From Scyliorhinus canicula (taxonomy: Eukaryota): DNA of 64,000 nt. Below, piece after piece: positions 61,631 to 61,746 of this stretch (position 1 is the first letter of the stretch; every line of letters starts with the position of its first letter). Below the pieces are notes generated by a model, which made no database searches, was not told the origin of the DNA, and was given only the letters and a program-made list of their open reading frames with translations. A program made the translations under genes and the position numbers. The DNA lies in the NCBI RefSeq assembly GCF_902713615.1, contig NC_052166.1, positions 2,156,961-2,220,960 on the forward strand. Reading direction: 5' to 3'.

Positions 61631-61746
61631 TCACCTGCTGCACAGCTTTGTAACCAGGTACAGACCTACCATCAACCCAAGAGCACCAACAATAACTCCA
61701 ACAGCACAGACAATGGTCCCAATGTGGAGCTGTGGATCTGACTGAT
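61631..61746 (-). CDS. Connecting-peptide/transmembrane exon of an MHC class II alpha-type gene (upstream exons outside window)
   Basis: Acceptor TTTTAAACAG|AT, phase 1. [38 protein letters not shown] then TGA (or donor AG|GTGAGT at 61,635). The C-x2-G-x3-G-x2-G-x3-G spacing is that of class II alpha TM helices. Confidence 0.7.

What the first reader, a model, noticed from the sequence alone, without database searches (positions are those of the whole stretch)
61631..61746. Unflagged MHC class II alpha-type transmembrane exon (classical IIA or W-category alpha?)
Seen: a 112-nt exon with good acceptor and donor encodes [29 protein letters not shown]. The ORF track misses it. Established: CxxGxxxGxxGxxxG is the dimerisation motif of MHC class II alpha TM helices and is shared by the alpha chain of the W-category MHC described in sharks. 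The tail either ends at once (CSR*) or splices AG|GTGAGT to a candidate acceptor CATTTACAG near 61,530, giving CSRQGKPCSSQFCK*. Inference: the window lies in or near an MHC locus, and the gene may be a divergent lineage.
Basis: partly seen in the sequence, partly recalled or inferred. Interest (0 to 1): 0.75.

Follow-up and report, generated by a model that had tools for sequence, protein, structure and literature searches.

The report
Known catshark W-category MHC exon

Summary
A 112-nt minus-strand exon (61746..61635), with AG/GT borders and entered in phase 1, encodes the connecting peptide and a transmembrane helix carrying the exact CxxGxxxGxxGxxxG string.

It is exon 4 of a five-exon, 255-aa gene. 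The leader, alpha1 and Ig-C1 exons lie 1.0-6.0 kb beyond the window end. My model is identical to RefSeq XP_038638223.1 of Scyliorhinus canicula, which is named "class II DP alpha-1 chain-like".

The gene is a W-category alpha chain of the WA_DS5 subgroup (Okamura et al. 2021), not classical IIA:
- The helix matches cloudy catshark WA_DS5-like at 24 of 25 residues, and the catshark's own classical IIA exons at 9 of 25.
- alpha2 has Trp61, lacks the Ig core Trp37, and hits only beta2-microglobulin among the 60 best solved chains.
- alpha1 misses Pfam MHC_II_alpha.
- A WB_Nds5L gene sits head-to-head with it.

The spliced tail (CSRQGKPCSSQFCK*) is the supported reading. The "near an MHC locus" inference fails: classical class I and II exons are on another chromosome-scale contig.

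Earlier follow-ups of this scan judged neighbouring W pairs on this contig known too.

One side finding: a ~0.4-kb TM/tail block is homogenised among four paralogues, while the alpha1 lineages are ancient.

The parts
61635..61746 (-). Exon 4 (112 nt) of the WA_DS5-type gene. It encodes the connecting peptide (D)QSDPQLHIG, the TM helix [22 protein letters not shown], and the membrane-proximal TKLCS plus the first two bases of Arg244.
   Evidence: It equals residues 207-244 of RefSeq XP_038638223.1. It is 24/25 identical to the cloudy catshark WA_DS5-like helix.
61521..61634 (-). Intron 4 (114 nt, phase 2, GT..AG). If it were retained, the frame would stop at once at TGA 61633-61631, giving ...CSR*.
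   Evidence: It is 96-98 % identical among the four paralogous copies.
61484..61520 (-). Coding start of exon 5: the last base of Arg244, QGKPCSSQFCK and the stop TAA (61486-61484). The 3' UTR continues downstream; its end was not determined.
   Evidence: The tail is present in the RefSeq model. It is colinear with the tails of banded houndshark cDNAs and other sharks. The reading frame and stop position are kept in all four copies.
61747..64000 (-). The 3' part of intron 3 (3,259 nt in all, running on to 1,005 nt beyond the window end). It includes a 32-nt minisatellite of about 58 copies at 61814-63646.

Best explanation
The exon is the connecting-peptide/transmembrane exon (exon 4 of 5) of an intact W-category MHC alpha-chain gene of the WA_DS5 subgroup in the small-spotted catshark (RefSeq XP_038638223.1). 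Its alpha1 domain is of the 'n4' type. The gene runs on the minus strand. The leader, alpha1 and Ig-like alpha2 exons lie at G000:C21 2227003-2226940, 2224626-2224354 and 2222247-2221966. The TM exon and the tail exon lie inside the window. The encoded type I chain is expected (by inference from the family) to pair with the product of the WB_Nds5L gene that sits head-to-head with it, giving a class II-shaped heterodimer. In that pairing the glycine face of this helix (two GxxxG motifs after a Cys that is a palmitoylation site in class II) would pack against the single GxxxG of the WB helix. Shown here: exon structure, identity with the annotated protein, family assignment, the paired WB gene, and location off the MHC. 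Inferred: heterodimer formation, helix packing, palmitoylation, and what the molecule binds.
For: Gene model: five exons, all borders AG/GT, intron phases 1,1,1,2, 255 aa. It is identical to P0003 = XP_038638223.1, which sits on a contig of the same length as C21. Family, by published sequences: Dataset S3 of PMC8713811 gives cloudy catshark WA_DS5-like as [41 protein letters not shown]. Over the helix core this exon scores 24/25 to that sequence, 18/25 to Triakis WA_DS5, and 8-9/25 to nurse shark IIA, elephant shark IIA and HLA-DRA. Family, by domains: alpha1 is 86 % identical to Triakis WA_DS5_n4 cDNA and 95 % to the S. torazame orthologue, and groups with them at 100/99 support. alpha2 has Tyr8, Leu55 and Trp61 and no Trp at position 37. 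The 60 best solved-chain matches of alpha2 alone are all beta2-microglobulin. Pfam finds only C1-set and no MHC_II_alpha. Library search: the CP/TM/CY peptide run against 1.84 billion representatives gave one hit at E<=0.001, a protein 49 % identical to P0003 over its whole length. No unrelated GxxxG membrane protein was hit. Partner gene: WB beta1, beta2 (MDGTFQ-type, Gly61, not Trp) and a TM exon reading ALIIIGAVLGILGISFAVVTGILYYC lie on the opposite strand beyond the WA start. Four such WA/WB pairs are on C21. Expression hint: exon 4 alone is held at 0.83-1.00 of sampled words by 19 small (21-334 Mb) run assemblies from about 10 studies. The same runs, where also listed, held only 0.19-0.44 of the 431-nt stretch that includes intron sequence. 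Heterodimer: shown for salamander WA/WB in PMC8713811. TM motif role: PMC13399432.
Against: The run kinds are only guessed to be RNA. Exon 4 is identical in paralogue B and nearly identical in C and D, so its words cannot be assigned to this copy. alpha2 position 37 is Ile, not the Phe/Leu given for WA, and position 57 is Val, not Phe/Tyr; Val57 is also found in the published Triakis WA_DS5. The TM-peptide complex prediction gave no verdict.
Confidence: 0.93

Rival explanations
1. It is the TM exon of a classical MHC class II alpha (IIA) gene.
For: It has the same CxxGxxxGxxGxxxG ladder as tetrapod IIA. HMMER aligns residues 99-240 of the protein, TM included, with HLA-DQ and HLA-DR alpha chains. 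RefSeq names it 'DP alpha-1 chain-like'.
Against: The catshark's four classical IIA TM exons are on C13 and read GTVICALG(V/L)TLGIISAVVGIILLIKERQR. Nurse shark IIA, to which they are 94 % identical, matches this exon at 9/25. The alpha1 domain has no PF00993 match, whereas four C13 exons do. alpha2 lacks Trp37, has Trp61 and matches beta2-microglobulin best.
Confidence: 0.01
2. The exon belongs to a silent or decaying duplicate; only the paralogues that share the same TM exon are expressed.
For: Four near-identical copies of the exon exist, so the word-share evidence cannot be assigned to one copy. alpha2 carries two substitutions not seen in the other sequences aligned (Ile37, and Val in CYVENF where the others have Ala). 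The 3' UTR of this copy diverges from the other three about 65 nt after the stop.
Against: All five exons are open and all splice sites are canonical. The S. torazame orthologue is intact and 95 %/89 % identical in alpha1/alpha2. The n4-type orthologue of Triakis was cloned as cDNA. Some runs hold 0.37-0.44 of the 431-nt stretch, which is more than exon 4 alone can give, so a 3' exon of this type is also held.
Confidence: 0.08
3. The main product ends at CSR* because intron 4 is retained, so the 11-residue tail is not made.
For: TGA follows the exon in frame, overlapping the donor (AG|GTGA). The intron is only 114 nt.
Against: The RefSeq model splices it. The tails of Triakis cDNAs and of Heptranchias and S. 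torazame models are colinear with exon 5. The exon 5 frame and its stop position are kept in all four copies; the two changes are one synonymous change and TAA to TGA at the following codon. The donor GTGAGT and the acceptor tract are strong.
Confidence: 0.07

Closest known systems
Banded houndshark (Triakis scyllium) WA_DS5_n4 (cDNA; Okamura et al. 2021, PMC8713811; P0006)
   Same: Same length class (256 vs 255 aa) and same domain order. alpha1 is 86 % identical and alpha2 78 %. The TM ladder CAVGVIxGxxGLxxGLYLVT and the tail type xGKPxSxQFxK are shared. The alpha1 domains group together at 100/99 support.
   Different: CP/TM/CY is only 61 % identical. The leader, TM and tail follow the species, not the alpha1 lineage. 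This gene has Ile37 where Triakis has Phe37.
Cloudy catshark (S. torazame) WA_DS5-like genes (82K contig, P0005; XP_072345152.1, P0014)
   Same: The helix is 24/25 identical to the 82K gene. P0014 is the orthologue, at 95 %/89 %/88 % identity in alpha1/alpha2/CP-TM-CY. A head-to-head WB_Nds5L partner was published for this species.
   Different: The 82K gene has a different alpha1 lineage (42 % identity); it corresponds to catshark gene C, not to this gene.
Classical MHC class II alpha chain TM domain (HLA-DRA; shark IIA)
   Same: A Cys followed by a glycine ladder on one helix face, in a type I chain with a short basic tail. The motif drives alpha/beta TM pairing, and the Cys is palmitoylated in class II (PMC13399432).
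   Different: Only 8-9 of 25 core residues are shared. The shark classical IIA has Ser at the third ladder position. The ectodomain has class I/beta2-microglobulin-type interface residues. The gene is not in the MHC.
Beta2-microglobulin
   Same: The alpha2 domain's best solved relatives are all beta2-microglobulin (65-89 bits). It shares Tyr8, Leu55, Trp61 and the absence of the Ig core Trp.
   Different: Beta2-microglobulin has no alpha1 domain and no membrane anchor; this chain has both.

Membership tests
W-category MHC alpha chain (WA), subgroup WA_DS5 | Class II alpha-type architecture: leader, membrane-distal alpha1, Ig-like C1-set alpha2, CP/TM/CY, one exon per domain | tested here: met
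   Five-exon model with intron phases 1,1,1,2. Pfam C1-set at residues 117-198.
W-category MHC alpha chain (WA), subgroup WA_DS5 | The name-giving Trp61 in alpha2, with Leu55 and Tyr8 (beta2-microglobulin-type interface residues) | tested here: met
   KKPVVHIY (Tyr8) and SSQLVVEADWTF (Leu55, Trp61). The definition is taken from PMC8713811.
W-category MHC alpha chain (WA), subgroup WA_DS5 | Phe/Tyr at alpha2 position 57 | tested here: not met
   Val57 here. The published Triakis WA_DS5 cDNAs also have Val (QLVVESDW), so the whole DS5 subgroup departs from this feature.
W-category MHC alpha chain (WA), subgroup WA_DS5 | No Trp at Ig core position 37 (Phe/Leu in WA, Leu in beta2-microglobulin; Trp in class II alpha2) | tested here: met
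   [10 protein letters not shown]: Ile37, so no Trp, though not the usual Phe/Leu. The catshark's classical IIA alpha2 exons have Trp (IIMKWKKNN).
W-category MHC alpha chain (WA), subgroup WA_DS5 | alpha2 closer to beta2-microglobulin than to class II alpha2 | tested here: met
   With alpha2 alone, the 60 best distinct PDB sequences are all beta2-microglobulin or its fusions. No tree including beta2-microglobulin was built here.
W-category MHC alpha chain (WA), subgroup WA_DS5 | Alpha-chain-type TM glycines (CxxGxxxGxxGxxxG in the DS5 subgroup) | tested here: met
   [15 protein letters not shown]. Dataset S3 rows. 24/25 and 18/25 identity to published DS5 helices.
W-category MHC alpha chain (WA), subgroup WA_DS5 | Head-to-head pairing with a WB gene whose beta2 lacks Trp61 (Gly61) | tested here: met
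   WB beta1 exon at window-extended 77120-77590. WB beta2 exon at 78883-79242 with QRDGTFQ. WB TM exon at G000:C21 2241002-2241115, of WB_Nds5L type.
W-category MHC alpha chain (WA), subgroup WA_DS5 | WA and WB chains form a surface heterodimer | not testable with these tools
   Shown only for salamander recombinant chains (PMC8713811). The TM-peptide complex prediction here gave no verdict.
Classical MHC class II alpha chain (IIA) | alpha1 matches Pfam MHC_II_alpha (PF00993) | tested here: not met
   No match even at E<=1. Four exons on C13 do match, at 47-59 bits.
Classical MHC class II alpha chain (IIA) | Gene lies in the MHC with class I and class II beta genes | tested here: not met
   All PF00993 hits and classical IIA TM exons are on C13. 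PF00129 hits are on C13, with a few on C9 and C1. None is on C21.
Classical MHC class II alpha chain (IIA) | Shark IIA-type CP/TM sequence | tested here: not met
   9/25 to nurse shark IIA. The catshark's own IIA exons are 94 % identical to nurse shark IIA.

The most novel reading that the evidence does not exclude
A block of about 0.4 kb (the last ~60 nt of intron 3, exon 4, intron 4, and the coding start and first ~60 nt of the 3' UTR of exon 5) is kept nearly identical among the four catshark WA_DS5 genes by gene conversion. The 80 nt coding the helix are identical in all four. Their alpha1 exons, in contrast, belong to lineages older than the split of Scyliorhinus from Triakis, and for the n4 type also from Heptranchias. 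The four partner WB_Nds5L TM exons are likewise 94-100 % identical. On this reading the membrane anchors of the W heterodimer are held as one interchangeable module, while the ligand-facing domains are preserved as distinct ancient loci. That would settle the locus-versus-allele question the 2021 paper left open for n4 versus n1-n3.
Probability: 0.55. Interest if true: 0.35.

Novelty: already known. Interest (0 to 1): 0.15.

Why it matters
For this finding, little changes. The exon, the gene and the family are already public, so the useful result is a correction of labels. XP_038638223.1 is a W-category alpha chain (WA_DS5, n4-type alpha1), not a 'DP alpha-1 chain-like' class II gene, and the locus is not part of the MHC.

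W-category molecules matter in general because they combine class II architecture with class I/beta2-microglobulin interface residues, and they have been proposed as the intermediate from which class I arose.

The chromosome-scale catshark cluster gives a complete map on which the function and evolution of the family can be studied. It holds four WA_DS5/WB_Nds5L pairs plus exons that look like WA_DS10, WA_Nds3L and further WB genes, all within about 0.6 Mb.

Tried and rejected
No read-level junction, strand or depth evidence could therefore be obtained.

2. A search for short protein fragments spanning alpha2-TM-tail that might come from transcript assemblies (search for homologous proteins on P0003:160-255) found only two alpha2 fragments and no TM-bearing fragment.

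3. An attempt to obtain a protein id for the WB partner from its beta1 exon found nothing, probably because of the tool's length window. A full-length WA/WB complex could therefore not be submitted.

4. Complex prediction on the two TM-exon peptides (WA residues 207-255 with WB HSSITKNE...CNLN) scored 0.06 against a mark of 0.34. That is no verdict, and is evidence neither for nor against binding.

5. The machine-read Fig. S1 of the PNAS supplement is corrupted, with rows repeated. I used only the spreadsheet Datasets S1-S3 and database sequences.

6. Considered and rejected: a classical IIA gene, a chance ORF, and an unrelated GxxxG membrane protein.

Full report
**Observation**

On the minus strand the window reads ttttaaacag|ATCAGTCAG...CTGTGCAGCAG|gtgagt, an exon of 112 nt at 61746..61635. 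In the frame that starts at 61744 it gives [37 protein letters not shown], followed by TGA. The other two frames give no comparable reading. The string Cys-x2-Gly-x3-Gly-x2-Gly-x3-Gly is present exactly.

**The rest of the gene**

The window is G000:C21:2156961-2220960. I fetched the next 30 kb. Below, window-extended numbering means coordinates continued past the window end.

- An open frame 1,006-1,287 nt beyond the window end encodes a C1-set Ig domain: [40 protein letters not shown]...YSCQVNHMSLKSPLTVFM. It has an AG acceptor and a GT donor, and it ends with one extra base (G). Joined to the AT that opens the finding's exon, this gives Asp.
- Further upstream lie an alpha1 exon and a leader exon (MELWSCLIIISSLTAVTRAEI).
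- Joined, the exons are leader 70043..69980, alpha1 67666..67394, alpha2 65287..65006, CP/TM 61746..61635, and a tail exon starting at 61520 (window-extended numbering).
- They give an uninterrupted 255-aa protein. All borders are canonical and the intron phases are 1,1,1,2.
- Intron 3 is 3,259 nt and holds the 32-nt minisatellite at 61814-63646.

**It is already annotated**

A database search with the Ig exon returned a 255-aa protein from a contig of exactly C21's length. It is RefSeq XP_038638223.1, 'RLA class II histocompatibility antigen, DP alpha-1 chain-like [Scyliorhinus canicula]'. It is identical to my model. The exon and the spliced tail CSRQGKPCSSQFCK are therefore in the public annotation, and the genome is the small-spotted catshark.

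**Which family**

The nearest named relatives are two Triakis scyllium 'MHC class II alpha chain like' proteins of 256 aa. These are the WA_DS5 cDNAs of Okamura et al. 2021 (PMC8713811), the paper that defined the W-category MHC.

Transmembrane helix:
- Dataset S3 of that paper aligns TM regions of IIA, DMA, WA, IIB, DMB and WB. The cloudy catshark WA_DS5-like row reads [41 protein letters not shown].
- Over the 25-residue helix core this exon is 24/25 identical to that row.
- It is 18-19/25 identical to Triakis and great white WA_DS5, and 9-11/25 to WA_DS10 and WA_Nds3L.
- It is 8-9/25 identical to nurse shark IIA, elephant shark IIA and HLA-DRA.
- Searching the catshark genome with the nurse shark IIA peptide found four exons, all on contig C13, reading GTVICALG(V/L)TLGIISAVVGIILLIKERQRLQA. 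The C21 exons were not found by that query.

Ectodomain:
- The alpha1 domain has no Pfam MHC_II_alpha match even at E<=1. Four exons on C13 do match.
- alpha2 has Tyr8, Leu55 and the name-giving Trp61 (EADWTF). It has Ile, not Trp, at the Ig core position 37. The catshark's classical IIA alpha2 exons have Trp37 and no Trp61.
- With alpha2 alone, the 60 best distinct PDB sequences are all beta2-microglobulin or its fusions. Class II alpha chains reach similar scores only when the TM region is included in the alignment.

Partner gene and library search:
- On the opposite strand, beyond the WA start codon, lies a WB gene. Its beta2 has Gly61 (QRDGTFQ). Its TM exon reads ALIIIGAVLGILGISFAVVTGILYYC, the WB_Nds5L type that the paper found paired head-to-head with WA_DS5-like in cloudy catshark.
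The CP/TM/CY peptide searched against 1.84 billion representatives gave a single hit at E<=0.001. That hit is a protein 49 % identical to the whole of P0003, that is, another WA_DS5-type chain.

**The tail**

If intron 4 (114 nt) were retained, the protein would end ...CSR*. Four lines of evidence support splicing to 61520:
- The RefSeq model splices it.
- The Triakis cDNAs end ...CSRLGKPRSRQFRKE.
- Heptranchias, S. torazame and the representative P0015 have colinear tails.
- The exon 5 frame and its stop position are kept in all four catshark copies.

**Not in the MHC**

All class II alpha (PF00993) matches and all classical IIA TM exons lie on C13 at 42.06-43.24 Mb (163-Mb contig). Class I (PF00129) matches lie on C13 at 32-65 Mb, with a few on C9 and C1. 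None is on C21. The W genes occupy C21 at 1.85-2.45 Mb. This matches the published family study in banded houndshark, where W genes form one linkage group that is not linked to the classical MHC (Fig. S9 legend).

**Expression**

I have no junction reads, and I sent none of those letters to any search afterwards.

Only indirect hints remain. Exon 4 alone is held at 0.83-1.00 of its sampled words by 19 small run assemblies from about ten studies. Those of them also listed for the 431-nt stretch with intron sequence held only 0.19-0.44 of it. That is what intron-free transcripts would give. However, the run kinds are only guessed, there were only six sampled words, and the exon is shared by paralogues.

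**How it most likely works**

This part rests on inference from the family and from class II.
- The chain is a type I membrane protein: a hydrophobic span [24 protein letters not shown] followed by Lys and Arg.
- In class II, the alpha-chain Cys and the GxxxG motifs, together with the single beta-chain GxxxG, drive TM pairing and conformer choice, and the Cys is palmitoylated. The same string was noted in W-category alpha chains (PMC13399432; PMC8713811).
- Salamander WA and WB need each other for glycan maturation and surface expression.
- I therefore expect this helix to pack through its glycine face against the GAVLG motif of the neighbouring WB chain.
- A complex prediction on the two TM peptides gave no verdict.

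**Side result**

The contig has four WA_DS5-type genes, each with a WB_Nds5L partner. This gene and gene D lie tail to tail about 78 kb apart, so almost the whole window is the spacer between them.

| Region compared | This gene vs paralogues B / C / D (nucleotide identity) |
|---|---|
| alpha1 | 69 / 66 / 59 % |
| alpha2 | 89 / 89 / 78 % |
| exon 4 + intron 4 + exon 5 coding part | 99 / 97 / 96 % |

- The 80 nt coding the helix are identical in all four copies.
- Homology between the copies starts only about 60 nt before exon 4.
- In trees, alpha1 of this gene groups with S. torazame XP_072345152.1, Triakis n4 and Heptranchias at 100/99 support. alpha2 groups largely by species or genus: the two Triakis chains at 97/95, and Scyliorhinus genes A-C at 83/86, while gene D groups apart with the S. 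torazame 159K gene.
- A neutral intron that is more alike than constrained exons points to recent gene conversion of the anchor block.
- The 2021 paper saw the same pattern among Triakis cDNAs and left open whether n4 is a separate locus. Here it is a separate locus.

**Verdict**

The gene, the family and the motif are already known. Earlier follow-ups of this scan reached the same verdict for neighbouring W pairs on this contig.

Noticed in passing
window 61380-61810 and G000:C21 1982433-1982856, 1846489-1846912, 2139800-2140205: A ~0.43-kb block (end of intron 3, TM exon, intron 4, tail exon start) is 93-95 % identical (96-99 % over exon 4, intron 4 and the exon 5 coding part) among four WA_DS5 genes whose alpha1 exons are only 59-69 % identical. 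The 80 nt coding the helix are identical in all four. This points to gene conversion of the membrane-anchor module.
   Followed up: partly
L012-L015 (G000:C13 42.67, 43.24, 42.09, 42.77 Mb): The catshark's four classical class II alpha TM exons read CALG(V/L)TLGIISAVVG, with Ser at the third ladder position, as in the nurse shark and elephant shark rows of Dataset S3. The full CxxGxxxGxxGxxxG string is therefore in the W alpha chain but not in the shark's classical IIA. This does not fit the '100 % conserved' statement in PMC13399432.
   Followed up: partly
L005:1006-1287 (alpha2 exon, 1,006 nt beyond the window end): This gene has Ile at alpha2 position 37 and Val in CYVENF, where its S. torazame orthologue, its paralogues and the other shark WA_DS5 chains aligned have Phe and Ala. 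These are two lineage-specific changes in the Ig core region.
   Followed up: no
G000:C21 2277073-2277399, 2341631-2341897, 2404514-2404765, 2313208-2313510, 2359771-2360073: Further W-type Ig exons lie downstream on the same contig. Two look WA_DS10-like (GDDWRFRV), one looks WA_Nds3L-like (DSSWMFQ) and two look like WB beta2 (MDGTFQ). The whole W family of this species would then sit within about 0.6 Mb.
   Followed up: partly
window 61814-63646; L005 1726-3286; window-extended 73757-77100: Kilobase-scale minisatellites fill WA intron 3 (32-nt unit) and WA intron 2, and another lies upstream of the WB beta1 exon (WB exon 1 was not mapped). Their long open frames on both strands are repeat artefacts.
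   Followed up: no
window 4253-5206 (+), 16394-17086 (+), 54679-55371 (-): The 78-kb spacer between the two tail-to-tail WA genes holds retroelement remains: an ORF with a GDSL-lipase/OSK-type domain and two reverse-transcriptase fragments. It also holds SINE-like 174-nt repeats, other minisatellites and a 100-N gap at 27425-27524.
   Followed up: partly
They lie about 370 nt downstream of the stop codon. They were not examined and were not sent to any search.
   Followed up: no
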